A DNA stretch of 63,657 nt, the filler included, from Octopus bimaculoides (lineage: Eukaryota), in the NCBI RefSeq assembly GCF_001194135.2. It is 7 parts of 6 records of this genome, joined end to end, with 100 filler letters (N's around TTAATTAATTAA, not from the genome) between each part and the next. Parts side by side here need not be neighbours in the genome. Positions count along the whole stretch, not along the records: positions 1 to 12,610 come from NC_068985.1; 6 more parts are not named here. One strand, written 5' to 3'. A program made the position numbers and the translations under genes. Each line of letters opens with the position of its first letter. The stretch's first letter is position 1. Shown in pieces: positions 1 to 12,278 of the stretch. Under the pieces are notes generated by a model that was not told the origin of the DNA, did not search any database, and saw nothing but the letters and a program-made list of their open reading frames with translations.

Positions 1-146
1 GGAGTGTTTATGCCCACGTAACTTAGCGGTTCGGTAAAAAGAAACCGATAGAATAAGTACATGGTTTACAAAGAATAAGTCCTGTTCCACTAAAGGCGGT
101 GCTCCAGCATGGCCGCAGTCAAAATGACTGAAACAGATAAAAGAAT
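1..146 (+). mobile_element. SINE family A, 3' part
   Basis: Matches the 3' half of the full copies (gtaacttagcggttcgg...ggtgctccagcatggccgcagtc...gactgaaaca). Confidence 0.85.
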
Positions 147-381
147 ATATATATAATATATATATAGAGAGAAAGAGACAGACAGACAGGGAGAGAGAGA
201 TTTAGATATACATTAACATATATATACACGCATACATGTGTGTTTGCATGAGTTTGTCTATGTGCATGTGTGCGTGTATATATATATATATATAGCTACA
301 CACACATGTATATATGTATATATGTATATATATATTTACACACATACATACATACATGCATACGTACATATAACACACACA

Positions 382-429
<48 letters not shown>

Positions 430-1340
430 ACATAATTATATATGCATGCTTATCTGTATGAGTTTGTATAGACGCATATATATGTATATATGTGTATATT
501 TGTGTGTGTGTGTGCCTTTATAATGTATGCATGTATTTGTATATGTGCATATATGTATGTGTGTGAGAGTGCGTGTGCGTATGTGTGTGTACGTATACAA
601 ACTCATACGTAGGCGCTTACACATCCGTTTTACACGCGCATACGGCCAGACACGACTAGATTGCACGCGCGCGCGCGCACTATCTTGCGTATAGATTTCT
701 ATTTACATTATGTAATTTGGAATTACATCTGAAAAAGAGTTCATGGAGAAATTTAGGAAAGACAAAACAACATATAGTGGCGGTAGTAGGGAAAAAGAGG
801 AGAAGGAAGGGGAGGGGANNNNNNNNNNNNNNNNNNNNNNNNNNNNNNNNNNNNNNNNNNNNNNNNNNNNNNNNNNNNNNNNNNNNNNNNNNNNNNNNNN
901 NNNNNNNNNNNNNNNNNNNNNNNNNNNNNNNNNNNNNNNNNNNNNNNNNNNNNNNNNNNNNNNNNNNNNNNNNNNNNNNNNNNNNNNNNNNNNNNNNNNN
1001 NNNNNNNNNNNNNNNAAGGAAGAGGGGAGTGGAAGGAAGAGTGGAGGAAATAAATGTTATGTATTTTCTTCTTTTTAATCATTCCGCCTCTTTCACTGCG
1101 TTTAGAAGTAACTTATGGATGTAATGCATTGATAAGAAAGAATACCAAAAAAGTTGTTGCTTTTTTTTTTCTTTCCCCACCTCAATTTTGTTTTTTTGTT
1201 TTTTTTTTATGTGTGTATGTGTTCAATGTGAAAATCATAAAGTCGGCAGCTGGGAAGACTAGAAATGTTGTGTGTTAGAAAACGGAGAGACTTCGTGGAG
1301 GATATACACATTAAGTTAACTGTCACCGTTTACTTCTCTA

Positions 1341-1844
1341 ATGCCGACTATCGGTAAATCTTCTTCTTCACACGCTGTCGCCATCGTCACCATCTCATGC
1401 GACAGTAGCCCCTCTGGTACCACCAATACCGACAACAACAGCAACAATATTGAAAACAGAACCAGTGTCTTCCGTGCTCCATCAGTGATTCCAGAATCAC
1501 CTGTATTACCACTAGCCCCGCGAACAACCCTATTATCGCCACCACCGCTAACCCTGCTGCTACCAACATCACCATCAACTCCACTACCGCCAACACCAAC
1601 ACCGTTATCATATCTGTTACTATTTTCTCTAGTAGTACCACCACTATTACCACTACTACCAGCATCACACGCAACTACAACGATAACAACCTCACTTCTA
1701 CCACCATCTCTACCGCAACTACCACCACCTTTACTGTCTCCTTCACTGACAACAACACCACTTCCTACACCAGCACCAACACCAACACTGCCACCGCCTC
1801 TATCATCATTACTATTAATACAAGCCTTGTTATCGCCATCATGA
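1341..1844 (+). promoter_or_regulatory. Pro/Thr/Leu-rich upstream ORF (167 codons) whose TGA overlaps the main ATG (ATGA); probably 5' UTR
   Basis: ORF track 1341..1844; weak start context (tctctaATG); built from degenerate ACC/ACT/ATC triplets, so the open frame may be passive. Confidence 0.3.
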
Positions 1845-4800
1845 CTTCGGCTAGCATCTCTGTTACCATTCCGGTTAGGTTGATCGCTGTGATCACAATT
1901 GCTGTGATACAATTTCTGGTCGCAGTGAGGACAGCATCGGCCCAGGATCTGTATGAAGGGGCTACACAGCAGTTACCTTCTGCAACAACATCTTTTGCCT
2001 CGGTTGACAATAGAACAGAAGAAGAAGCAGCGACCCAGTTGGCTCCATTACCACAAGAAAACTCCACGTTAGTTACTACCGACCAACCAGAATACACAGA
2101 CGTCACAATTTTAGACGAATCCATTTTAACGACACAGTTTCAAGAAATATCCACTGTCTCACAAAGAAACCAACCAGCTGATATTCATACTAATGGAAAT
2201 AATGAGAAGAAAAGCATTGACAAAAATGGTCGAGTTACGGATATTATTACCCAGAAGAACATTGTCGTTGACAAAAGCGATAATAAGATCGTTATACAAG
2301 CAGACAGAAAAGGTGGATTGAGAGAGGAAGCTGTTGCCAAAAATGACAGTTTTATAGAGGGACTTGTTAGTGACGATCATGGCGGTGGTGGTGGTGATGC
2401 TGGTATTCTTATGAAGAAAAGGATTTCAAAGAGTACTAAACAAAAGGCACAAGAACCGATAATTTTCAAAAGCGATTTGGATATTTTACAACAGCAATTA
2501 AAGCACCAAAACCAAGAACTCGCTGATCTTCGGATACGTCTTTCTGAAAGTGACATCGCTTTGATTGATATAGAAACGAAATTCTACAAATACTTACAAA
2601 CGGAAAGGTTGGTGTCAGATGGCACGGAACACGATAGAAATACTTTAAAGCAACGACTCTCTAATCAAGATACCAAACTGAAGCAATTACCGAGATTGTT
2701 CGATTGTCAAAACAGTTTTCCTAAAGAAGCTGACTTCGATATTTTTCGAAATCAAGTGGAAGATAACTTCAAGTCGGTATTAAAAGAATTGGATTATCTT
2801 CGAGCCTGGCGTCAAGATTATTTGAAACAAACAACAGAGTTAACTGCGACTGAAGCTTTTGAAAATACTTTTCAGTCTGCCTCGGTGCCTAGTGAACAAT
2901 CTGAAAGGGACAAATTCAAAGAGATTAAGGGTAACAGTTCTATGGATTTACAAACAAATACAAGCAAAGATTTCGAGAATTTAAGTTTAGAAAATAACTC
3001 AATATCGAAACATATGTTTGCAACACATCTGAAACATGATTTCTCAAACATAACGTCACAAACAGACGACATTACTGAGTCTACAGAAACTTTTAATATC
3101 ACTGAAGACAAGAAAATTGAAGAATTTGTGTATCTCGAAAAGCTACTACAGGAAATAAACCAAAAAGTAGATACTGCACACACACGCCTTGATAACTTGG
3201 AAGAAAACATGATACTATCTATGGAGAATGTTTCACAAATATTAAGCTTATCGCAAGAAATTTTAAATGGAAATATTACGTTCCTCCAGTTCCAGATTAA
3301 CCAAATTTTTGCTCGACTTGAATCAAAACAAAATCAGTCTGAAATTAATATTTATTATGAAGAGCTTAAACCAAATTTTACTAGACTTATTAATGAAGTT
3401 TATCAGGAACTGAAGACAGCAAACACCATCGAGCGAAGTTACAATGACACGGCAGATACCTATGTTTTACCTTTAAAAAACAGTTCTAAAGTTGTTGGAA
3501 ATGTTAGCAGACCATTCGATTATACCATTAATGCAAGCTGGAATTTTACAAATATTTCTCAAATAAATGGAGAAGAAGCATATAACGATTTTTCTTCTGA
3601 ACTGATTAGTATTAAACAAAATTTTACTGAACTTTACCGCAAGGTTGAAAATGTTGATTCCAATTATGCTGATGTTTCTCAACGCCTAGATCGTTTTTCT
3701 CGCCAGTTGTCTTCCATTATGACACGACTAGAACAGGATACGGATCATCAGAATGGATTATCTTTGAATAAATTATCACTCAAAAGTAAAAGCGTTTCGA
3801 GTCATTTAGATGTTTTAAACGAAGATTATAAGAAAGATGTAGGAAACTTGGATTCTAAACAAAGTACTGGATTGAAATCAAATGAAAGTTTCTTCCAAAG
3901 TACAGAGTATTTAGAATCGACATATTTTCCCAACACGTCAACAACTTTCCAAAATAAAACCGAAGATAAACTATTCAAATGGATATCTAGAAATTTTTTT
4001 AGAAATATAACTTCTGATCAGTTTTTAACACTTTCGGATATTTCCGAGACAAGTAAGACAGGCGAAAATGCTTTGTGTTATAATTTCTCAGATGTAAACG
4101 ATTCAGATTCTGAAGTATCAATATTGAAAACCTTTTTGGAACATTTAGGATCTATGTTAATAGAAGTTAAAAACCATTTAAATATAATGTGTTCTGAAAC
4201 GAACCGAACATCGGATCGTTCCGAGAAAGAAACGACGATAAATTCTTCTAGTGTTGAGAGCGAAACATTTTACGGGAATATTACAGAAAATTCAGCAACT
4301 TCTGAAAACATTACTTTTCCAGACGAGTCTTTTGACACTCGAGGGAACTCTACGTTTTTATCGTCTATTAAAAGTACCCATAGCGGAATAAAACACAATA
4401 TAAATAAAAATCATTCTGCACTCCATAATTCTACTATGCATAGCTTTGAAGAAACAGAAGGAAAAGAAAACAAAACAGTCGTGGAATTGGAGCAATATAT
4501 GTTTTCTTTAGGTGATATGGAAAATGAAACTTTACCTGGACATAATTTTTCTGGAGTAACTCATTCAAAACATTTGGAACGTATCTACTTTGAAATTAAA
4601 ACCCTTAGTTTAAGGATTGACGTACTTGAAAATAAACTTCTTTTGTTGAATAAGGAGCCTTTTGCAGACATGGAAGCAAACAAAACTATTCCTTTCGTTG
4701 GAAGCGACTACAGAGGGTCAGGATCTTTAGATTCAGAGCTTACTGAGGACCAGGATGTTTTACAAAACTTAATTTCTAACCTAACTCAAATTCAGAAACG

Positions 4801-5225
4801 CTTCGAATGTTTAAATTCAAATGTGCAGCTCCAAGAAAAACAATTGTCAAGTGTAAAAATGAATATGTTTAAATTAAACGAAAGAGTTGAGCATTTCACT
4901 CGGGAAAATTCAGGACGAGAGACCGAAAGCATTATGTTCACTGTTGAAAACACTAAAGATGATATAAGTAAACTTATTGAAGATATGTCCGAAATATCAC
5001 GCCAGGTTTCATCATTTTCAGAGCTCAATTTAACTGATACTCTTAGAAATGTAAAGTGCCATTTAGAAGAACATCAAACGGAGATAAGGAATCTGAAAGA
5101 AGTAATGGAATACCAAAATGAAAATAAATCGATGGTTTTCTGGAAACGGCAACCTGTCGAGGAAAAAATATTATACGTTGGTGTCCAGGAGCATAAGCGA
5201 CAAAAGGATTTGAACAAAACAATTG
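1841..5225 (+). CDS. Large coding exon of a secreted or cell-surface, coiled-coil, heavily N-glycosylated protein (5' part of a multi-exon gene; about 1128 aa encoded here)
   Basis: Stop-free 3385-nt frame in AT-rich DNA. ATG in gccatcATG context; hydrophobic leader ending TASA|Q at residue 34/35. Several heptad-like amphipathic segments (e.g. LEKLLQEINQKVDTAHTRLDNLEEN, LQNLISNLTQIQKRFECLNSNVQLQEKQL). About 41 N-x-S/T sequons and 5 Cys. Ends at ATTG|GTAAGT (phase 1), followed by a (TACA)n intron, so the ORF-track extension to 6214 is intron read-through. Confidence 0.9.
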
Positions 5226-6294
5226 GTAAGTTCACCTATTTTCATTTTACCGCAAAATGTATTTATCAATCTATTTACGTGTATATACATACATACATAC
5301 ATACATACATACATACATACATACATACATACATACATGCATATATATATATATATATANNNNNNNNNNNNNNNNNNNNNNNNNNNNNNNNNNNNNNNNN
5401 NNNNNNNNNNNNNNNNNNNNNNNNNNNNNNNNNNNNNNNNNNNNNNNNNNNNNNNNNNNNNNNNNNNNNNNNNNNNNNNNNNNNNNNNNNNNNNNNNNNN
5501 NNNNNNNNNNNNNNNNNNNNNNNNNNNNNNNNNNNNNNNNNNNNNNNNNNNNNNNNNNNNNNNNNNNNNNNNNNNNNNNNNNNNNNNNNNNNNNNNNNNN
5601 NNNNNNNNNNNNNNNNNNNNNNNNNNNNNNNNNNNNNNNNNNNNNNNNNNNNNNNNNNNNNNNNNNNNNNNNNNNNNNNNNNNNNNNNNNNNNNNNNNNN
5701 NNNNNNNNNNNNNNNNNNNNNNNNNNNNNNNNNNNNNNNNNNNNNNNNNNNNNNNNNNNNNNNNNNNNNNNNNNNNNNNNNNNNNNNNNNNNNNNNNNNN
5801 NNNNNNNNNNNNNNNNNNNNNNNNNNNNNNNNNNNNNNNNNNNNNNNNNNNNNNNNNNNNNNNNNNNNNNNNNNNNNNNNNNNNNNNNNNNNNNNNNNNN
5901 NNNNNNNNNNNNNNNNNNNNNNNNNNNNNNNNNNNNNNNNNNNNNNNNNNNNNNNNNNNNNNNNNNNNNNNNNNNNNNNNNNNNNNNNNNNNNNNNNNNN
6001 NNNNNNNNNNNNNNNNNNNNNNNNNNNNNNNNNNNNNNNNNNNNNNNNNNNNNNNNNNNNNNNNNNNNNNNNNNNNNNNNNNNNNNNNNNNNNNNNNNNN
6101 NNNNNNNNNNNNNNNNNNNNNNNNNNNNNNNNNNNNNNNNNNNNNNNNNNNNNNNACAAGGATATCTTCTGGATATCCTTGTTGCTTATTTTGATTTTAA
6201 TCACCTTACTTTGAAATTGTATGGATAATGCCCTACTAAATTCTGGTGCCTCAACTTAAGTACCATATTCATCTGAATCTAAATTTTTGCTATG

Positions 6295-6326
<32 letters not shown>

Positions 6327-6370
6327 GGTGTGTGTGTGTGTGTGTGTAAGCATGTATGTATGTATGTATG

Positions 6371-6404
<34 letters not shown>

Positions 6405-6496
6405 TATATGTATGTATGTATGTATGTATCTATGTATGTATGTATGCATGTATGTGTGTATGCATGTATGAATGTATGGTTGTATGTATATATTCA

Positions 6497-6736
6497 TGTG
6501 TGTGTGTCTTTGTGTCTGTGTTTGTTCGCCACCCACAATCGCTTGACAACCGATGTTGGTGTGTTTACGTTGCGTAACTTAGCGGTTCGGAAAAACAGGC
6601 CGATAGAATACGTGCCTGGCTTACAAAGATTAAGATCCAGGATTGATTTCTTCGACTAAAGAAAAAACCCTTTAAGGCGATGCTCCAGCATGGCAGCAGT
6701 CAAATGACTGAAACAAATAAAAGACTAAAAGAATAA
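6497..6736 (+). mobile_element. SINE family A, 3' half
   Basis: Same diagnostic motifs as the copy at 18536-18950, in forward orientation. Confidence 0.85.
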
Positions 6737-6831
6737 ACACTTGAAACAGCCTTATTCTAAGATACCTGTGTGTATAACACATAATATATATACAAGCGTG
6801 GAAAAGCACCAACAGAAATATTTTGTCTTAG

Positions 6832-6911
6832 AGAAACTTTTCAAAGACACAGTGTTTCGGCCTGATTTGATCATCTCAGTACCAAATATCCCAGATGTTC
6901 TGAGCCAAGCC
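6832..6911 (+). CDS. Candidate exon 2 of the 1841 gene (phase 1 to 0; (E)KLFKDTVFRPDLIISVPNIPDVLSQA)
   Basis: Acceptor atattttgtcttag|, donor gcc|gtaaat; phase matches the exon-1 donor; frame open. No transcript evidence. Confidence 0.3.
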
Positions 6912-6981
6912 GTAAATGTTTGTTCCTGTAGCTATATATCTGTTATTTGATTTTCTTTTAAGTATCTCTTATAAACTTGGA

Positions 6982-7372
6982 GTGGAGGCGCAATGGCCCG
7001 GTGGTTAGGGCAGCGGACTCGCGGTCATAGGATCGCAGTTTCGATTCCCAGACCGGGCGTTGTGAGTGTTTATTGAGCGAAAACGCCTAAAGCTCCACGA
7101 GGCTCCGGCAGGAGATGGTGGCGAACCCTGTTGTACGCTTCCATCACAACTTTCTCTCACTCTTACTTCCTGTTTCTGTTGTGCCTGTAATTCAAAGGGT
7201 CAGCCTTGTCACACTGTGTCACGCTGAATATCCCCGAGAACTTCGTTAAGGGTACACGTGTCTGTGGAGTGCTCAGCCATTTGCACGTTAATTTCACGAG
7301 CAAGCTGTTCCATTGATCAGATCAACTGGAACCCTCGACGTTGTAAGCGACGGAGTGCCAACAACAACAACA
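6982..7372 (+). mobile_element. Full-length tRNA-derived SINE family B with 43-bp TSD
   Basis: A box tggcccggtgg and B box gtttcgattcc; (CAA)n tail; identical 43-mers at 6939-6981 and 7382-7424. Confidence 0.92.
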
Positions 7373-7924
7373 AATTTCGGCTCTGTTATTTGATTTTCTT
7401 TTAAGTATCTCTTATAAACTTGGAATTGGTCTCTGAGTAAATAACACAATTTCTTCAATTGAAATTTAGTCGGCAACATGAATGAAAACTATATAGTGGA
7501 CCTCAGCAAAATATTGGCTCTTTGTTACAATCTCACTTACGAATCTTCAGTTCTCTTTTATATTATTTGTAAAATTTATTATTGCTTAAATATTTGAGGA
7601 CATAAACAAATATCTCAATGTTTATAGATACATAATACGCTCATACTGCTACAGGTGCAGTTTAACACTGAGTTAACCATGGTCGTATAGAACTGTGATG
7701 AAAGATATTCAAATCGCAACATTCCTATCCTTACGAATATCTAGAAAGACTTTGAAGAACGTCAGTTATTTATTTTAAGACAGTAGTGAGATCAAATCTG
7801 CACATACATACGTACGTACGTACATACATACATACATACATACATACATACATACATACATACATACATACGTACGTACGTACGTACGTACGTACATATG
7901 TACGTACATATATGGCACTCCTTA

Positions 7925-8228
7925 AGTTACAACGATGGTTCAAGTTGATCCAATCAACAGAACAGCTGCTCACGAAATCAACATGCAAGTAGCTGAGCAC
8001 TCCACAGGCACGCGTTCCCTCAACGTAATTCTCAGGGAGATTCAACATGACACAGAATGTGACACGGCTGGCCTTTGAATTTCAGGTACTACTCGTTTCT
8101 GTCAGCTGAAGGGGGTAACGTGAAATAAATTGTCTTGCTCAAGGGCACAACGCGCCGAAGGGCATCGAACTCACGACCTTATGATTTTGTGACCCGATTA
8201 CTCTAACCACTGAGCCTCGCGCCTTCAC
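7925..8228 (-). mobile_element. SINE family B-prime (shares the 3' half of family B, different tRNA head)
   Basis: Reverse complement carries gatcaacttgaacc...cgttgtaac and a tRNA-like head with gttcgatg. Confidence 0.75.
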
Positions 8229-9809
8229 GTGCATACATAAATACACACATACTTGCTGGATTTGTATATTATATCTGTGAGTGGAATGTACAAAACTCTA
8301 TAGTATCAACGCTATATTTTGTACCGCACACATACAGACAAATAGAAATACGCCCACAGACATACGCGCACACACATACACTCAGATATATACACACTTT
8401 CATACACACACGCACACACACACACACTTACACACACGCACGCACACATACACCAACACTCGCATGTACACCCGCATTTATGTACACACAAACTCACGCG
8501 ACAAACCAGTAAATTTTCTTTGACTATGAGCAGCTGTTTATCACAGATATACATCTATTTGGTAAGATTTGTTTTCCGCAATATTTACCAATAATGTTTT
8601 GGTTGGCAGTTAGAATGAACAAGAAAAACATTTCGACGTAGCTCTAACTTCTTTTTTATTTTCTTAATTCATTGCCGGCTCTTGTTGCACTTACCGAGCG
8701 CCGCTTTGTGTATCTTGGATACGTGCAGCACTGTAGGTTTTATATTTTAATTTTTGCATACTATTCCAGTCATGGGCAAACTACGGCGCGTGGGACTTAT
8801 TGAACGGCACGCATAAATAAAAATTACCTTCAATTTTGTTTAGTAATGTGTCTCACCTGATCATGATTCATGTCTGTAAACAGTTCGCCTGTGCTTGTAT
8901 TTCTTCTATTGAAAGTACCCTGCACAGTATCTTTGACGTGACTAGTAGCGATATTTTTTGCATGTTGAGTCTATTTGTAAATCCCGACTTTTAAGCTATG
9001 TCCGCACCATTCTTTATTGTTTATGTTGTTTTTTTTATCAACTATATCAGTGTTTCTCAACCATTCTTTACCTATGGGCCCCTTTGACTCCAACGATACA
9101 TGCATGTACCCTCCCAGTCATTCGATGTTTAAAATATCCTATTGTATTTCTATAATCAAATGTCATAATTTTAAAGATCTTTTGTGTATTGTAGAAGTAT
9201 AACAACAAAATCTGTATGAACCCCAGTTGAAAACCATTGATCTATATTATTAGTTTTCAGTTTATCTCTATTTCCCCGCCGTTATATTTGGTTAATTCAC
9301 CGAATTTGTGGAATGACACATTAGTATTTATTGGGATTAATACCTCGATGAGAAGACATTTCTTTTTTACAGGATTTCTAACAGTGATGAATTTACTAAC
9401 CTTGATCTCTCTGTCGGTCCCAGAGATCGCTTCCGGTGACTGTTTGTATCACCTCTTTCTATAATACATAAATCTATCAAAATTTGACAAAGCGGTCAAA
9501 ACTCTGTAAAACCCCCAACTCTGTCTTGCCTGAAAATGTATTCTTTCTTGGCTAAGACTGGACACTCTTGACTAGTTTACGGACACTCTGATAGGCGGAA
9601 AATCAAATCTATATATAGCTGCCATATGTCAAAGAACAAAGGCGCTGAAAACAAAATGTTAATGACATCCTGTTTTTACCCGAGAATTGGTTGGTCCAGT
9701 TCCTTGCTGATGCCATCAACCCTTGACAAAATCCTGTTTGCACTATTGTTGCTTTTTATATGTAAATACAATGATTCGAGCACAAGTTGCTTTATTCCAT
9801 TAAAAATGT

Positions 9810-10290
9810 TATGCATAGAATGACATTAATACGTGACATTGTGTTTGGAGAATGTGGTATGGTTTTTATGGGGAGTCTTGTGTTTTTACTTTTTTTTTGT
9901 TGTATTCTTTATCACAGCTCGTGTTCCAGTTATTATTGGTACTATTTTTACTGTTATATTCCACATTTATTTATTGCTTATTTATATTTCAAGGTCCTTG
10001 TACTTGGCTATCGTCTCGATTTTTTTCTGGGCGATGTTTAGATCAGAAGTGACTGTGATGTCCATTAGAGTACAGATATTTTTGTGCACAATGCAGAAAA
10101 GAAACAAGAAGCCTAGGTTCCTATCTTTGATAACTGTAATTGAACGGTTCATTGACCGTATTGATAAGCATGTTCCTGTTTATTGCAGCTAGACAGTTGT
10201 CATACATTGCTTATGTACATCTTTCTACCGTTTGTCCATTTCTATGCCAAAGTGTTGTGCCTTTTGTATTTCTTTTATATTTTGTGGGGC
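9810..10290 (-). mobile_element. Degenerate R4/Dong-like non-LTR retrotransposon, REL-endonuclease region
   Basis: Minus translation AQHFGIEMDKR*...ICTLMDITVTSDLNIAQKKIETIAKYKDLEI*ISNK*MWNITVKIVPIITG fits the C-terminal pattern D.x.P.x.D.N...KYxDL...MW...PII.G of R4-clade elements; several stops. Confidence 0.75.
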
Positions 10291-10576
10291 CGGATCCAAA
10301 TTCTGGCTCTCGAACATTTCTTCAAAGCGATACACGAAGGCTCCGTTGTCATAGCCAAAACTTGTGAACGAGAGTGAACGCCGTTCTAAGGGTTCGGGTG
10401 GCTGAGACGCAATGTGGAAGCAAAACAATTCGATCTTTCACAAACCAGAAGATGCAAATGCTACTTGGTTTCAAACAGCTGTGTCCATCTCTGCATCAGC
10501 CCTTTGCTCGACTGTGAACGATGGGTCGAGGAGACGTTAGTACACTCTAGCGTCCACCTCGGCGGAAATTTAAATA

Positions 10577-11129
10577 CAGTAATCCCTCGACTATCGCGGG
10601 TATTACGTTCCAAAAACCCCCGCGATAGATGAAAATACACGATGAAAATACACGATAAATGAAAATACACGATAGATGAAAATACACGGTAGATGAAAAT
10701 ACACGATGTAGAAAAAGTACTGTATATTTTTTAATTATTCTTATAATTTGTATATATTTATTATATTATAAATGCAGAGCAATATCACACACTCGCCTCC
10801 CGCGTTTTGTTTTCCATACAGTATGTGTGATTCTTTGTTTACTCATCTATGGTACATTACGTATTTTCTTTTGACATATTTTAATTGATGTGTTATACTG
10901 TGCAGTACTGTACTGTATTTCTATTTATTGATTTATTAATTTTTAGGCGTGAAACTGCTTATTTTACCACAGAAATAATTAAAATCTAAAAAAATATAAA
11001 TACCTATCGGCCGCAGCAACCCGCGATGTACTGAAGAATACGCGATATAAATTTACATATATTAGCCAGAAAAATCCGCGATGTACTGAGGGCGCGATAG
11101 GTGAACCGCGATATGGCGAGTGATTACCG
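10577..11129. mobile_element. Tigger/pogo-like MITE (Tc1/mariner superfamily)
   Basis: Left TIR cagtaatccctcgactatcgcgg after TA; right end ccgcgatatggcgagtgattaccg is its imperfect reverse complement; subterminal ccgcgat motifs. Confidence 0.8.
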
Positions 11130-12108
11130 CACACTGATAAAGATCATGGTCCCCTAAGGAGAAACTGCTTTTAGCCCAAAGCTTTTGCACTTTTGCTGAC
11201 TTTCACACTGGTTTGCTTTCTCAGTTGAACCTTGAGGAATATTAGCCATGACGTGGTCTTTCTCTAATGTTTTTTTGTTTTTGTTTTTTGTGTGTGTGTG
11301 GCTGTGTGGCAAGAACTTNNNNNNNNNNNNNNNNNNNNNNNNNNNNNNNNNNNNNNNNNNNNNNNNNNNNNNNNNNNNNNNNNNNNNNNNNNNNNNNNNN
11401 NNNNNNNNNNNNNNNNNNNNNNNNNNNNNNNNNNNNNNNNNNNNNNNNNNNNNNNNNNNNNNNNNNNNNNNNNNNNNNNNNNNNNNNNNNNNNNNNNNNN
11501 NNNNNNNNNNNNNNNNNNNNNNNNNNNNNNNNNNNNNNNNNNNNNNNNNNNNNNNNNNNNNNNNNNNNNNNNNNNNNNNNNNNNNNNNNNNNNNNNNNNN
11601 NNNNNNNNNNNNNNNNNNNNNNNNNNNNNNNNNNNNNNNNNNNNNNNNNNNNNNNNNNNNNNNNNNNNNNNNNNNNNNNNNNNNNNNNNNNNNNNNNNNN
11701 NNNNNNNNNNNNNNNNNNNNNNNNNNNNNNNNNNNNNNNNNNNNNNNNNNNNNNNNNNNNNNNNNNNNNNNNNNNNNNNNNNNNNNNNNNNNNNNNNNNN
11801 NNNNNNNNNNNNNNNNNNNNNNNNNNNNNNNNNNNNNNNNNNNNNNNNNNNNNNNNNNNNNNNNNNNNNNNNNNNNNNNNNNNNNNNNNNNNNNNNNNNN
11901 NNNNNNNNNNNNNNNNNNNNNNNNNNNNNNNNNNNNNNNNNNNNNNNNNNNNNNNNNNNNNNNNNNNNNNNNNNNNNNNNNNNNNNNNNNNNNNNNNNNN
12001 NNNNNNNNNNNNNNNNNNNNNNNNNNNNNNNNNNNNNNNNNNNNNNNNNNNNNNNNNNNNNNNNNNNNNNNNNNNNNNNNNNNNNNNNNNNNNNNNNNNN
12101 NNNNNNNN

Positions 12109-12157
<49 letters not shown>

Positions 12158-12278
12158 CTTACTTGTTGACAAAAGTTATAGAAATACGTAGCGTTGCATT
12201 AAATAATAAGTTAAAAGCATATAATAAATACACAAACAAACGGGAAACGGATACAGAAGGTCGCCAACTCTTCACCAG

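What the first reader, a model, noticed from the sequence alone, without database searches (positions are those of the whole stretch)
1841..5225. A 3.4-kb exon encoding a secreted coiled-coil glycoprotein stalk with about 41 sequons and no recognisable domain
Seen: a 34-aa leader ending ASA|Q; a Thr/Glu-rich N-terminal segment; a KKR site near residue 190; at least six heptad-like helices alternating with Ser/Thr/Asn-rich linkers; a GSGS motif; only 5 Cys. Only 3 sequons fall in the first ~360 aa and about 38 after that. Established: signal peptide plus a long glycosylated coiled coil in one big exon followed by a phase-1 intron is the layout of trimeric extracellular proteins such as multimerin/EMILIN (gC1q), angiopoietin-like (FReD) and class-A scavenger receptors or collectins. 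Inference: this is the stalk of a possibly cephalopod-specific matrix, mucus or immune protein whose head domain is encoded downstream, in gaps, or off the window. I do not recognise an orthologue.
Basis: partly seen in the sequence, partly recalled or inferred. Interest (0 to 1): 0.7.

Follow-up and report, generated by a model that had tools for sequence, protein, structure and literature searches.

The report
Glycosylated coiled-coil stalk of cephalopod lectin
The 3.4-kb reading frame is the real first exon of a gene so far found only in cephalopods; it encodes a membrane-targeting segment and a very long, sugar-coated coiled-coil stalk that in related species carries a C-type-lectin-like head encoded tens of kilobases downstream, which makes it an unusual version of a familiar kind of recognition protein.

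Summary
Window 1841-5225 is one 1128-codon exon ending at a phase-1 G|GTAAGT donor. It has 41 N-x-S/T sequons, 3 in the first 360 residues and 38 after (14.6±3.2 expected). It also has 5 Cys, KKR192 and GSGS959. Heptad periodicity is about 17-fold enriched. The exon is under purifying selection (dN/dS 0.30-0.35), and sequons are conserved between Octopus and Argonauta.

An exhaustive profile search of 1.84 billion representative proteins found relatives in only two further lineages, so the stalk is lineage-restricted with no known domain.

After an intron of 14-38 kb, three small exons encode a divergent C-type lectin-like domain. Its best solved match is the SRCL/CL-P1 CRD (E 6e-7), and it lacks the EPN/QPD and WND motifs. 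A Cys-rich, tentatively PAN-like domain follows. These exons lie off the window.

A full-length transcript from a distant relative has a 58-residue N-terminal tail before the hydrophobic segment, and Argonauta lacks a cleavage motif. The protein may therefore be type II membrane-anchored, like SRCL or CLEC4F, rather than secreted.

Verdict: a real gene and a new variant of the coiled-coil-stalk C-type lectin receptor theme, of moderate interest.

The parts
1341..1840 (+). C/A-rich low-complexity leader, most likely 5'UTR. In O. sinensis and O. vulgaris it is an in-frame ORF from the ATG equivalent to 1341 and has been annotated as a 178-residue N-terminal extension.
   Evidence: The window has a 1-bp deletion near 1561 relative to both species, so the ATG1341 frame ends at the TGA at 1842-1844. 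Identity here equals that of the flanks (93.6% against 92.6-93.7%). Substitutions are not concentrated at third positions ([4,8,2] and [7,7,3]). Argonauta has in-frame stops upstream of its Met.
1841..1942 (+). Start codon (A at -3) and the N-terminal ER-targeting hydrophobic segment, residues 1-34. The n-region is 13 aa, the apolar core is LIAVITIAVIQFLVAV, and the segment ends RTASA|Q. It is either a cleavable signal peptide or a type II signal anchor.
   Evidence: This is the only hydrophobic segment in the 1128 aa (KD19 max 2.36; the maximum elsewhere is 0.89). The start position is conserved in Argonauta.
1943..2455 (+). Poorly conserved Thr/Gln/Glu/Ser-rich N-terminal ectodomain segment (residues 35-205), including the poly-Gly run and the non-conserved KKR192. 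No helix is predicted here.
   Evidence: Identity to Argonauta is 24-40% and dN/dS is 0.65 against O. sinensis. The corresponding region in distant relatives is Ser/Thr/Pro-rich. AF2 secondary structure shows essentially no helix or strand in this stretch (a single 3-residue helix at 93-95).
2468..2881 (+). First two heptad helices (residues 210-255 and 299-347), flanking the conserved Cys289. This is the most conserved block of the stalk.
   Evidence: Heptad segments 207-261 and 295-339. AF2 helices 210-255 and 299-347. 76% identity to Argonauta in residues 201-250. The block is recognisable in P0004 and P0005.
2921..5224 (+). Sequon-rich part of the stalk (residues 361-1128). It holds 38 N-x-S/T sites, mostly in Asn/Ser/Thr-rich linkers between helices.
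   Evidence: 38 observed against 14.6±3.2 expected. 27 of the whole exon's 41 sequons sit in the same alignment column in Argonauta. Sequon Asn is conserved 32/41 against 21/50 for other Asn (Fisher p = 6e-4). 35 of 41 sequons lie outside helices.
3104..3424 (+). Heptad helices, residues 422-528. They contain the deeply conserved sequons at N463 and N478.
3569..3745 (+). Heptad helix, residues 577-635. 88% of a/d positions are hydrophobic. It contains the conserved sequon N594.
4112..4189 (+). Heptad helix, residues 758-783. All a/d positions are hydrophobic. It lies between the conserved Cys746 and Cys784.
4562..4654 (+). Heptad helix, residues 908-938.
4712..4729 (+). Conserved linker motif RGSGSL (residues 958-963) followed by an acidic cluster. 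A possible glycosaminoglycan attachment site or hinge; this is inference only.
   Evidence: Invariant in Octopus and Argonauta. The motif reads Y-x-G-S-G in P0004 and P0005.
4727..5131 (+). Membrane-distal run of three long heptad helices (residues 963-1022, 1026-1060, 1064-1097), immediately before the head. This is the region best conserved in the distant relatives and the likely oligomerising neck.
   Evidence: The profile hit to P0004 covers positions 908-1129.
5225..5231 (+). Last exon base (G, first base of a split GAT/Asp codon) plus the GTAAGT splice donor. The intron is phase 1.
   Evidence: O. vulgaris has the same donor, and its acceptor ttgcag|AT completes GAT. The same boundary and phase occur in L004.
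5226..12610 (+). First 7.4 kb of intron 1, containing microsatellites, SINE-like repeats and two N gaps. No head exons are present.
   Evidence: Window 6291-12582 is colinear with O. vulgaris intron 1 (L001 15339-22935). tblastn of the head against the window finds nothing. Intron 1 is about 38 kb in O. vulgaris and about 14 kb in Argonauta.

Best explanation
Window 1841-5225 is the first coding exon of a gene so far found only in cephalopods. No paralogue more than 50% diverged turned up in octopods.

What the exon encodes:
- An N-terminal hydrophobic segment that takes the chain into the ER.
- About 1,090 residues of extracellular stalk. This starts with a poorly conserved Thr/Gln/Glu-rich segment. 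At least eight amphipathic heptad helices follow, about 440 helical residues in all, or about 65 nm if collinear. Asn/Ser/Thr-rich linkers carrying about 35 N-glycans interrupt the helices.

How it most likely works: the helices most likely pair between chains, so the protein forms a parallel coiled-coil oligomer. The glycans keep the linkers extended, soluble and protease-resistant.

The remaining three exons lie 14-38 kb downstream in orthologues and off this window. They add a divergent C-type lectin-like domain, which lacks the canonical Ca2+/sugar ligands, and a Cys-rich PAN/apple-like domain. The exon's job is therefore to oligomerise and project a cluster of CTLD heads far from the cell, as the necks of SRCL/CL-P1, CLEC4F, langerin or CD23 do.

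I lean to an uncleaved type II signal anchor giving a cell-surface receptor (about 55:45 over a cleaved signal peptide).

Basis of each step:
- Shown: exon structure, selection, sequon and heptad enrichment, and the link to a CTLD head in orthologues.
- Inferred: oligomerisation, actual glycan occupancy, topology and ligand.
For: - Real coding exon: dN/dS is 0.35 against O. sinensis and 0.30 against Argonauta, with third-position excess [44,39,70], p = 0.004. It is colinear with gene models in three octopod species.
- Luminal or extracellular stalk: sequons are 2.6-fold enriched here (z 7.3), in Argonauta (35 against 14.2) and in P0005 (25 against 12.3). Sequon Asn is preferentially conserved.
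- Coiled coil: heptad windows are 17-fold over the shuffle expectation, and a/d positions are 57-100% hydrophobic in ten helices. The AF2 model is all-helical with no strands, though at low confidence.
- Head: orthologues continue into ...CYYAF...HWIGAE...WFWV...YICE. A PDB profile search gives SRCL 6.4e-7 and CL-P1 1.3e-6 over the whole CRD, and 41 of 42 hits are CTLDs. Pfam Lectin_C scores E 0.0014-0.0035, covering 4-106 of 107 profile positions in P0005.
- Expression and splicing: the Logan transcript contig L005 (5258 nt, CDS 727-5127) joins stalk to head at the same boundary.
- Anchor: P0004 and P0005 have a 58-residue, Arg-rich N-terminal tail, no Met nearer the hydrophobic segment, and an in-frame stop upstream. 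Argonauta has no -3/-1 cleavage site, and the octopod KD19 is 2.36-2.48.
Against: - Both AF2 models are low confidence (pLDDT 29 and 35), so helix limits and the head fold rest on sequence statistics alone.
- Pfam Lectin_C and PAN matches are all below the gathering thresholds. PAN gets no significant PDB support.
- The head lacks the C2-C3 disulfide positions and the EPN/QPD and WND motifs, so sugar binding cannot be assumed.
- The Octopus segment has a canonical ASA|Q site and only 16 uninterrupted apolar residues, which fits a cleaved signal peptide.
- The 58-residue tail in P0004/P0005 shows dN/dS 0.8 on few sites.
- There is no expression data for the window's own species, and the head exons of this species were not seen.
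- The taxa of P0004 and P0005 are unknown.
Confidence: 0.6

Rival explanations
1. The architecture is the same, but the protein is secreted. The 34-residue leader is cleaved at ASA|Q and the protein is a soluble oligomeric lectin-like molecule of haemolymph, mucus or matrix, comparable to a collectin or tetranectin without collagen.
For: There is a canonical small-x-small site with Gln at +1. The n-region is short (13 aa) and the apolar core is 16 residues bounded by Arg13 and Arg30. In the window and in Argonauta no longer N-terminal tail can be translated.
Against: The cleavage motif is not conserved in Argonauta, which reads TTAPTPD with Pro at +1. The hydrophobic window passes the usual transmembrane threshold (KD19 2.36). 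Distant relatives place 58 residues in front of the segment. No signal-peptide predictor could be run.
Confidence: 0.35
2. Translation starts at ATG 1341, as in the O. sinensis model. This would give a Thr/Asn/Ser/Pro-rich cytoplasmic tail of about 170 residues ahead of a transmembrane segment. The 1-bp deletion at about 1561 in the window would then be an assembly error.
For: The frame is open from the equivalent ATG in both O. sinensis and O. vulgaris. Most indels in this stretch are multiples of three. Relatives P0004 and P0005 do have an N-terminal tail.
Against: - In the window the frame is broken, and the gap sits among substitutions, not in a homopolymer.
- The stretch is no more conserved than the flanks, and third positions change least.
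- Several of the in-frame indels are trinucleotide-repeat length changes.
- Argonauta has stops upstream.
- ATG 1341 has C at -3, whereas ATG 1841 has A.
- The P0005 leader tolerates 10 upstream ATGs.
Confidence: 0.1
3. The stalk itself is the functional part: a fibrous, heavily glycosylated structural or mucus protein. The small C-terminal domains would serve only for cross-linking or assembly, not for ligand recognition.
For: The stalk makes up over 80% of the protein. Four conserved Cys (289, 746, 784, 1073) and a conserved GSG/acidic motif could mediate cross-links or GAG attachment. The CTLD lacks sugar-binding motifs.
Against: The head is much better conserved than the stalk: 75-86% against 46-49% between Octopus and Argonauta, and 48% against 22% to P0005. 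That is the pattern expected when the head is the specific binding module.
Confidence: 0.12
4. This is not a functional gene: a chance ORF, a pseudogene or part of a repeat element.
For: No Pfam domain is found and the sequence is compositionally biased. N gaps and repeats surround the ORF.
Against: The ORF runs 1128 codons without a stop in 33% GC DNA. It shows purifying selection, a conserved splice donor and phase in four lineages, conserved synteny with the intron, and a spliced transcript in a relative.
Confidence: 0.02

Closest known systems
SRCL / CL-P1 (COLEC12, SCARA4), the scavenger receptor with C-type lectin
   Same: An N-terminal hydrophobic anchor is followed by a long N-glycosylated alpha-helical coiled coil and then a C-terminal CTLD. 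Its CRD is the best solved-structure match to the orthologues' head (E 6.4e-7 and 1.3e-6, full-length alignment). It is a type II homotrimer (PMC8353498).
   Different: No collagen-like Gly-X-Y region is present. The stalk is roughly three times longer and is broken into at least 8 helices. There is no sequence similarity in the stalk. The head lacks QPD and WND and the C2-C3 cysteines. An extra Cys-rich PAN-like domain follows the CTLD.
CLEC4F (Kupffer cell receptor), langerin, DC-SIGN and CD23: type II CTLD receptors with heptad or repeat necks
   Same: A short N-terminus and signal anchor are followed by a heptad neck that oligomerises and a C-terminal CTLD. The CLEC4F CRD is among the top hits (E 1.4e-4).
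   Different: Their necks are tens to a few hundred residues long, against about 1,090 here (figures for the known receptors are from my own knowledge). They have canonical EPN/QPD Ca2+ sites and no PAN-like domain.
Collectins (MBL, SP-D) and tetranectin: secreted oligomeric CTLD proteins
   Same: Both have a signal peptide, an alpha-helical coiled-coil neck directly preceding the CTLD, and avidity through clustering of heads.
   Different: Collectins need a collagen triple helix, which is absent here. Their necks are about 30 residues long. Secretion is not established here.
   Same: A signal sequence is followed by a long coiled coil and a C-terminal globular head.
   Different: The head in the orthologues is a CTLD, not gC1q or a fibrinogen-related domain. 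There is no EMI domain.

Membership tests
C-type lectin-like domain (CTLD) superfamily (applies to the whole gene; the domain is not in the window) | Significant sequence match to CTLDs over the whole domain | tested here: met
   A profile of three orthologue heads against PDB gives SRCL 6.4e-7 and CL-P1 1.3e-6 (positions 17-134 against 11-131). 41 of 42 hits are CTLDs. A single-sequence search gives 1.7e-5.
C-type lectin-like domain (CTLD) superfamily | Pfam Lectin_C (PF00059) at or above the gathering score of 22.6 bits | tested here: not met
   Scores are 18.5, 18.9 and 19.8 bits (E 0.0035, 0.0026, 0.0014). In P0005 the match covers 4-106 of 107 profile positions. The domain is divergent and sub-threshold.
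C-type lectin-like domain (CTLD) superfamily | WIGL-type motif and the C1-C4 disulfide cysteines (alpha1 Cys and the final ...ICE Cys) | tested here: met
   HWIGAE, C42 and C131 (Y/F-I/V-C-E) are invariant in three lineages. The long-form N-terminal pair C4/C22 is also present.
C-type lectin-like domain (CTLD) superfamily | C2-C3 disulfide cysteines | tested here: not met
   The aligned positions read ...YMRALVW... and ...WLGAGRRRHARY... with no Cys in the octopods. Other invariant Cys (C89, C141) occur instead.
Ca2+-dependent carbohydrate-binding C-type lectins (CRDs) | EPN or QPD motif plus WND motif (Ca2+ site 2 ligands) | tested here: not met
   In the HMMER alignment the QPDNW of SRCL aligns to N-I/P-P-W, and WND aligns to W-L/S-G. 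Canonical sugar binding is not predicted.
Collectins and class-A scavenger receptors with a collagenous region (SR-A1, MARCO, SCARA5, SRCL) | Collagen-like Gly-X-Y repeat region | tested here: not met
   The only (G-x-x)≥3 match is the GGGGDAGIL run, and Gly is 3.0% of residues.
Type II membrane CTLD receptors (SRCL, CLEC4F, langerin, CD23) | Uncleaved N-terminal signal anchor with a cytoplasmic tail | tested here: inconclusive
   KD19 is 2.36 and this is the only hydrophobic segment. ASA|Q is present in Octopus but absent in Argonauta. The 58-residue tail is seen in P0004 and P0005. No SignalP or TMHMM was available.
   17% of windows exceed the 99th percentile of shuffles. In ten helices a/d positions are 57-100% hydrophobic.
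   No multimer modelling was available. The monomer AF2 model has pLDDT 29.
PAN/apple domain (the C-terminal domain of the orthologues) | Pfam PAN_1 or PAN_4 at the gathering score, or a significant match to solved apple domains | tested here: inconclusive
   PAN_4 scores E 0.022 and 0.078 and PAN_1 E 0.024, all below the cut-offs. PDB apple-domain proteins (2yil, 4a5v) score only E 0.34 and 7.9.
EMILIN/multimerin (gC1q) and angiopoietin-like (FReD) | C-terminal gC1q or fibrinogen-related domain | tested here: not met
   No such Pfam or PDB match is found in any orthologue, and the head matches CTLDs instead.

The most novel reading that the evidence does not exclude
A cephalopod-specific receptor family with by far the longest stalk of any C-type lectin-like receptor. 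It would consist of a type II anchor, about 1,100 residues of segmented, heavily N-glycosylated coiled coil and possibly a GAG chain at the conserved GSG/acidic hinge. The stalk would hold a Ca2+-independent CTLD plus apple-like head about 70-100 nm above the cell surface. That reaches beyond the glycocalyx or mucus layer and would suit cell-cell, gamete or microbe recognition in a way not described for any lectin receptor.
Probability: 0.3. Interest if true: 0.5.

Novelty: new variant of a known kind. Interest (0 to 1): 0.3.

Why it matters
The finding gives a testable identity to a gene that public annotation calls 'hypothetical', 'uncharacterized' or, wrongly, 'phosphatidylinositol 3-kinase 2-like'. 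It adds an extreme case to the coiled-coil-neck C-type lectin receptors: a stalk several times longer than any I know of (own knowledge), built from one giant exon, with a non-canonical CTLD and an extra Cys-rich domain. It appears confined to cephalopods, whose innate immune and cell-recognition receptors are poorly known.

Conservation is high in the head and low in the stalk, yet sequons and heptads are retained. That makes it a clean natural example of selection on physical properties (length, glycan coat, oligomerisation) rather than on sequence. It does not open a long-standing question, so interest is moderate.

Tried and rejected
- Pfam on the exon and on the full orthologues gave nothing significant.
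- A word-indexed protein search with the 227-aa head returned no hit, not even the head's parent protein, so that search was wasted.
- AF2 of the head as a single sequence gave pLDDT 34.7, and AF2 of the 1128-aa exon product with a 3-sequence alignment gave pLDDT 29.1. Both are too poor for fold comparison. Only the secondary-structure strings were used, and only as weak support.
- A PDB profile search with the stalk found no relative.
- A PDB profile search with the C-terminal Cys-rich domain gave only insignificant apple-domain hits, plus a chance scorpion-toxin hit at E 0.047.
- Rfam found nothing in the window.
- Literature searches returned nothing relevant. They covered octopus/cephalopod C-type lectin with coiled-coil or PAN, the run and assembly accessions, and the LOC identifier.
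- The KKR192 dibasic site was rejected as a processing site because it is not conserved.
- The N-terminal extension from ATG 1341 was rejected as probably untranslated.
- Head exons hidden in the window's intron or gaps were ruled out for the readable sequence, and orthologous intron lengths place them beyond the window.
- gC1q, FReD and collagen-containing families were rejected.


Full report
**1. The observation**

The + strand frame is open from ATG 1841. It reaches a consensus donor, caattG|GTAAGT, with the last exon base at 5225. That gives 1128 codons plus one base, so the intron is phase 1.

- 41 N-x-S/T sequons, 3 in residues 1-360 and 38 afterwards.
- Five Cys, at 289, 746, 784, 990 and 1073.
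- KKR at 192 and GSGS at 959.
- A leader ending ASA|Q at residues 34/35.

The sequon excess is not a composition effect. Residues 361-1128 hold 38 sequons against 14.6±3.2 in composition-preserving shuffles, and no shuffle in 2000 reached 38. The mirror motif [ST]-x-N, along with N-[ST], N-x-x-[ST] and Q-x-[ST], is at or below expectation; D-x-[ST] is only slightly above its shuffle mean (10 against 8.2±2.4).

A heptad test scored a/d hydrophobic occupancy in 28-residue windows against 50 shuffles. 17% of windows fell above the 99th percentile. The test delimits segments at about 207-261, 295-339, 416-502, 570-650, 742-796, 904-939 and 953-1099. In the best registers a/d positions are 57-100% hydrophobic, and 35 of 41 sequons lie outside the helices.

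An AF2 model of the exon product is all-helical with the same helix boundaries and no strands. Its pLDDT is only 29, so I use it as weak corroboration only. Pfam and PDB sequence searches find no domain in the exon.

**2. It is a real, selected exon**

The protein has orthologues in three octopods:
- O. sinensis (P0001): 92% identity, partial, mis-named 'phosphatidylinositol 3-kinase 2-like'.
- O. vulgaris (P0002): 93% identity, N-terminally truncated model.
- Argonauta hians (P0003): 46% identity, full length, 1339 aa.

All three are colinear with 1841-5224 without interruption. dN/dS is 0.35 against O. sinensis (dS 0.097) and 0.30 against Argonauta. Substitutions are enriched at third positions ([44,39,70], p = 0.004).

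Sequons are themselves conserved:
- 27 of 41 occupy the same alignment column in Argonauta.
- Sequon Asn is retained 32/41 against 21/50 for other Asn (Fisher p = 6e-4).
- The Argonauta stalk shows the same enrichment, 35 against 14.2±3.2.

This is the signature of a chain that passes through the ER and is N-glycosylated.

**3. What the exon belongs to**

In O. vulgaris (L001) and Argonauta (L002) the big exon is followed by an intron of about 38 kb and about 14 kb respectively. Three exons of 70-90 codons follow. O. vulgaris has the same G|GTAAGT donor and an acceptor ttgcag|AT, which completes a GAT codon.

The window's downstream 7.4 kb is colinear with the start of the O. vulgaris intron and contains no head exon.

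The 227 residues encoded by the three small exons match only C-type lectin-like domains in the PDB:
- A single sequence gives the CL-P1 CRD at 1.7e-5, SRCL at 8e-5 and CLEC4F at 1.4e-4.
- A three-lineage profile gives SRCL at 6.4e-7 and CL-P1 at 1.3e-6 over the whole CRD, and 41 of 42 hits are CTLDs.
- Pfam Lectin_C is consistently just below threshold, at 18.5-19.8 against 22.6 bits.

The domain keeps HWIGAE, the C1-C4 cysteines and the long-form N-terminal pair. It lacks the C2-C3 cysteines, EPN/QPD and WND. I therefore call it a divergent, probably non-Ca2+-sugar-binding CTLD.

The last 90 or so residues are Cys-rich, with repeated sub-threshold PAN_1/PAN_4 matches. There is no significant PDB support. 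'PAN/apple-like' is tentative.

The head is far better conserved than the stalk. Between Octopus and Argonauta the figures are 75-86% against 46-49%.

**4. How far the family reaches**

I searched 1.84 billion representative proteins exhaustively with an HMMER profile of the stalk. Only the octopod cluster and one more protein came back: P0004 at E 1.5e-10.

P0004 is an ORF on an ENA contig of unknown taxon (L004). It is 22% identical but colinear over about 770 residues, and it ends at the same phase-1 G|GTAAGA boundary.

Its 61%-identical relative P0005 comes from a 5,258-nt Logan transcript contig (L005, CDS 727-5127). That transcript is spliced from stalk to CTLD plus the Cys-rich domain at the same point. 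The family is therefore expressed, and the architecture is confirmed from RNA.

A four-way alignment shows conservation of:
- the first coiled coil and Cys289;
- several individual sequons (N463, N478, N594, N681, N980, N1095, N1125);
- the Y-x-G-S-G hinge;
- the final three helices.

I infer, without proof, that P0004 and P0005 are decapodiform cephalopods. No paper mentions the gene.

**5. Start codon and topology**

O. sinensis and O. vulgaris have an ORF continuing 178 codons upstream to the ATG equivalent to window 1341. Several observations argue that this stretch is a low-complexity 5' leader:
- In the window a 1-bp deletion near 1561 breaks the frame.
- The stretch is no more conserved than flanking non-coding DNA.
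- Its substitutions avoid third positions rather than favouring them.
- Argonauta has in-frame stops just upstream of its Met.
- ATG 1841 has A at -3.

I therefore take 1841 as the start.

The hydrophobic segment is the only one in the protein (KD19 2.36). Whether it is cleaved is open.
- For cleavage: ASA|Q and a 16-residue core.
- Against cleavage: the motif is missing in Argonauta.
- Against cleavage: P0004 and P0005 place a 58-residue Arg-rich tail in front of the segment, with no nearer Met and an upstream stop. This is the layout of a type II signal anchor.
- Caveat: the tail shows dN/dS 0.8 on only 58 codons.

I lean about 55:45 to a type II anchor.

**6. Mechanism**

Shown: an ER-targeted, N-glycosylated, heptad-rich stalk joined to a CTLD head.

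Inferred:
- The helices form a parallel coiled-coil oligomer.
- The glycosylated linkers act as stiffened, protease-resistant spacers.
- The conserved Cys (289, 746, 784, 1073) may form interchain disulfides.
- The conserved RGSGSL-acidic motif may be a hinge or a GAG site.
- The whole stalk projects clustered heads about 65 nm or more from the membrane (444 helical residues × 0.15 nm), giving avidity.

This is how SRCL/CL-P1, CLEC4F, langerin and CD23 work. [quoted passage not shown]

**7. Comparison and novelty**

It works like a coiled-coil-neck C-type lectin receptor. It is not a collectin or an SR-A member, because it has no collagen region. It is not a canonical CRD, because it has no Ca2+ site. 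It is not an EMILIN or angiopoietin-like protein.

It differs from every described member that I know of in four ways:
- stalk length (about 1,090 residues in one exon);
- segmentation of the stalk;
- the non-canonical CTLD;
- the extra Cys-rich domain.

I rate it a new variant of a known kind, with interest about 0.3. Lineage-specific CTLD proteins are common in invertebrates, and nothing here overturns expectation, but the architecture is extreme and the public annotation is wrong or empty.

Noticed in passing
window 1341-1844 (+); L003 10001-10534; L001 8842-9375: The O. sinensis RefSeq-type model starts 178 codons upstream in a Thr/Asn/Ser/Pro low-complexity stretch. It is named 'phosphatidylinositol 3-kinase 2-like', probably because of that low-complexity region. 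In the window the same ATG opens a 167-codon upstream ORF in another frame, ending at a TGA that overlaps the main ATG (ATGA).
   Followed up: yes
L001 about 9861-9902 (O. vulgaris), equivalent to window about 2360-2400: The O. vulgaris chromosome assembly has a frameshift or deletion in the poly-Gly/'IEGLVSDDHGGGGG' region. This is why its gene model (P0002) starts at an internal Met (MRLSESD...) and lacks the first 231 residues.
   Followed up: partly
window 1-170, 270-500, 6431-6792, 6972-7174: Interspersed SINE-like repeats associated with microsatellites. Each matches 5-15 other places, on both strands, within the 67-kb O. vulgaris locus and also in the O. sinensis and Argonauta loci, at 73-90% identity.
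   Followed up: partly
window 1886-1918: The hydrophobic core of the leader contains an imperfect 14/15-nt tandem duplication, GCTGTGATCACAATT ×2.3, encoding AVITIAVI. The apolar segment may have been lengthened by duplication in octopods.
   Followed up: no
window 10623-10716: A 17-bp tandem repeat (CGATAGATGAAAATACA, about 5 copies) lies inside intron 1. Its significance is unknown.
   Followed up: no
window 819-1015, 5360-6155, 11319-12108: Three assembly gaps (runs of N) are each flanked by microsatellites: (TACA)n, (TATG)n and (GA)n. The long 'ORFs' that the ORF listing reports across them are artefacts of N translated as X.
   Followed up: yes
window 1316-1912 (-): A 198-codon Gly/Val/Ser-rich ORF on the minus strand mirrors the C/A-rich leader (GC skew -0.47). 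It looks like a by-product of low complexity, not a gene.
   Followed up: no
L005 1-726: The 5' leader of the full-length transcript in the distant relative is 726 nt long and carries 10 upstream ATGs. It is colinear with genomic L004, so the leader, start codon and stalk share one exon there too. This suggests translational control by upstream ORFs.
   Followed up: partly
L004 10001-10174 against L005 727-900: The 58-codon N-terminal tail of P0004/P0005 has a much lower synonymous divergence (dS 0.21) than the rest of the gene (dS 0.88), with dN/dS 0.8. This hints at nucleotide-level constraint around the start codon rather than, or in addition to, protein-level constraint.
   Followed up: no
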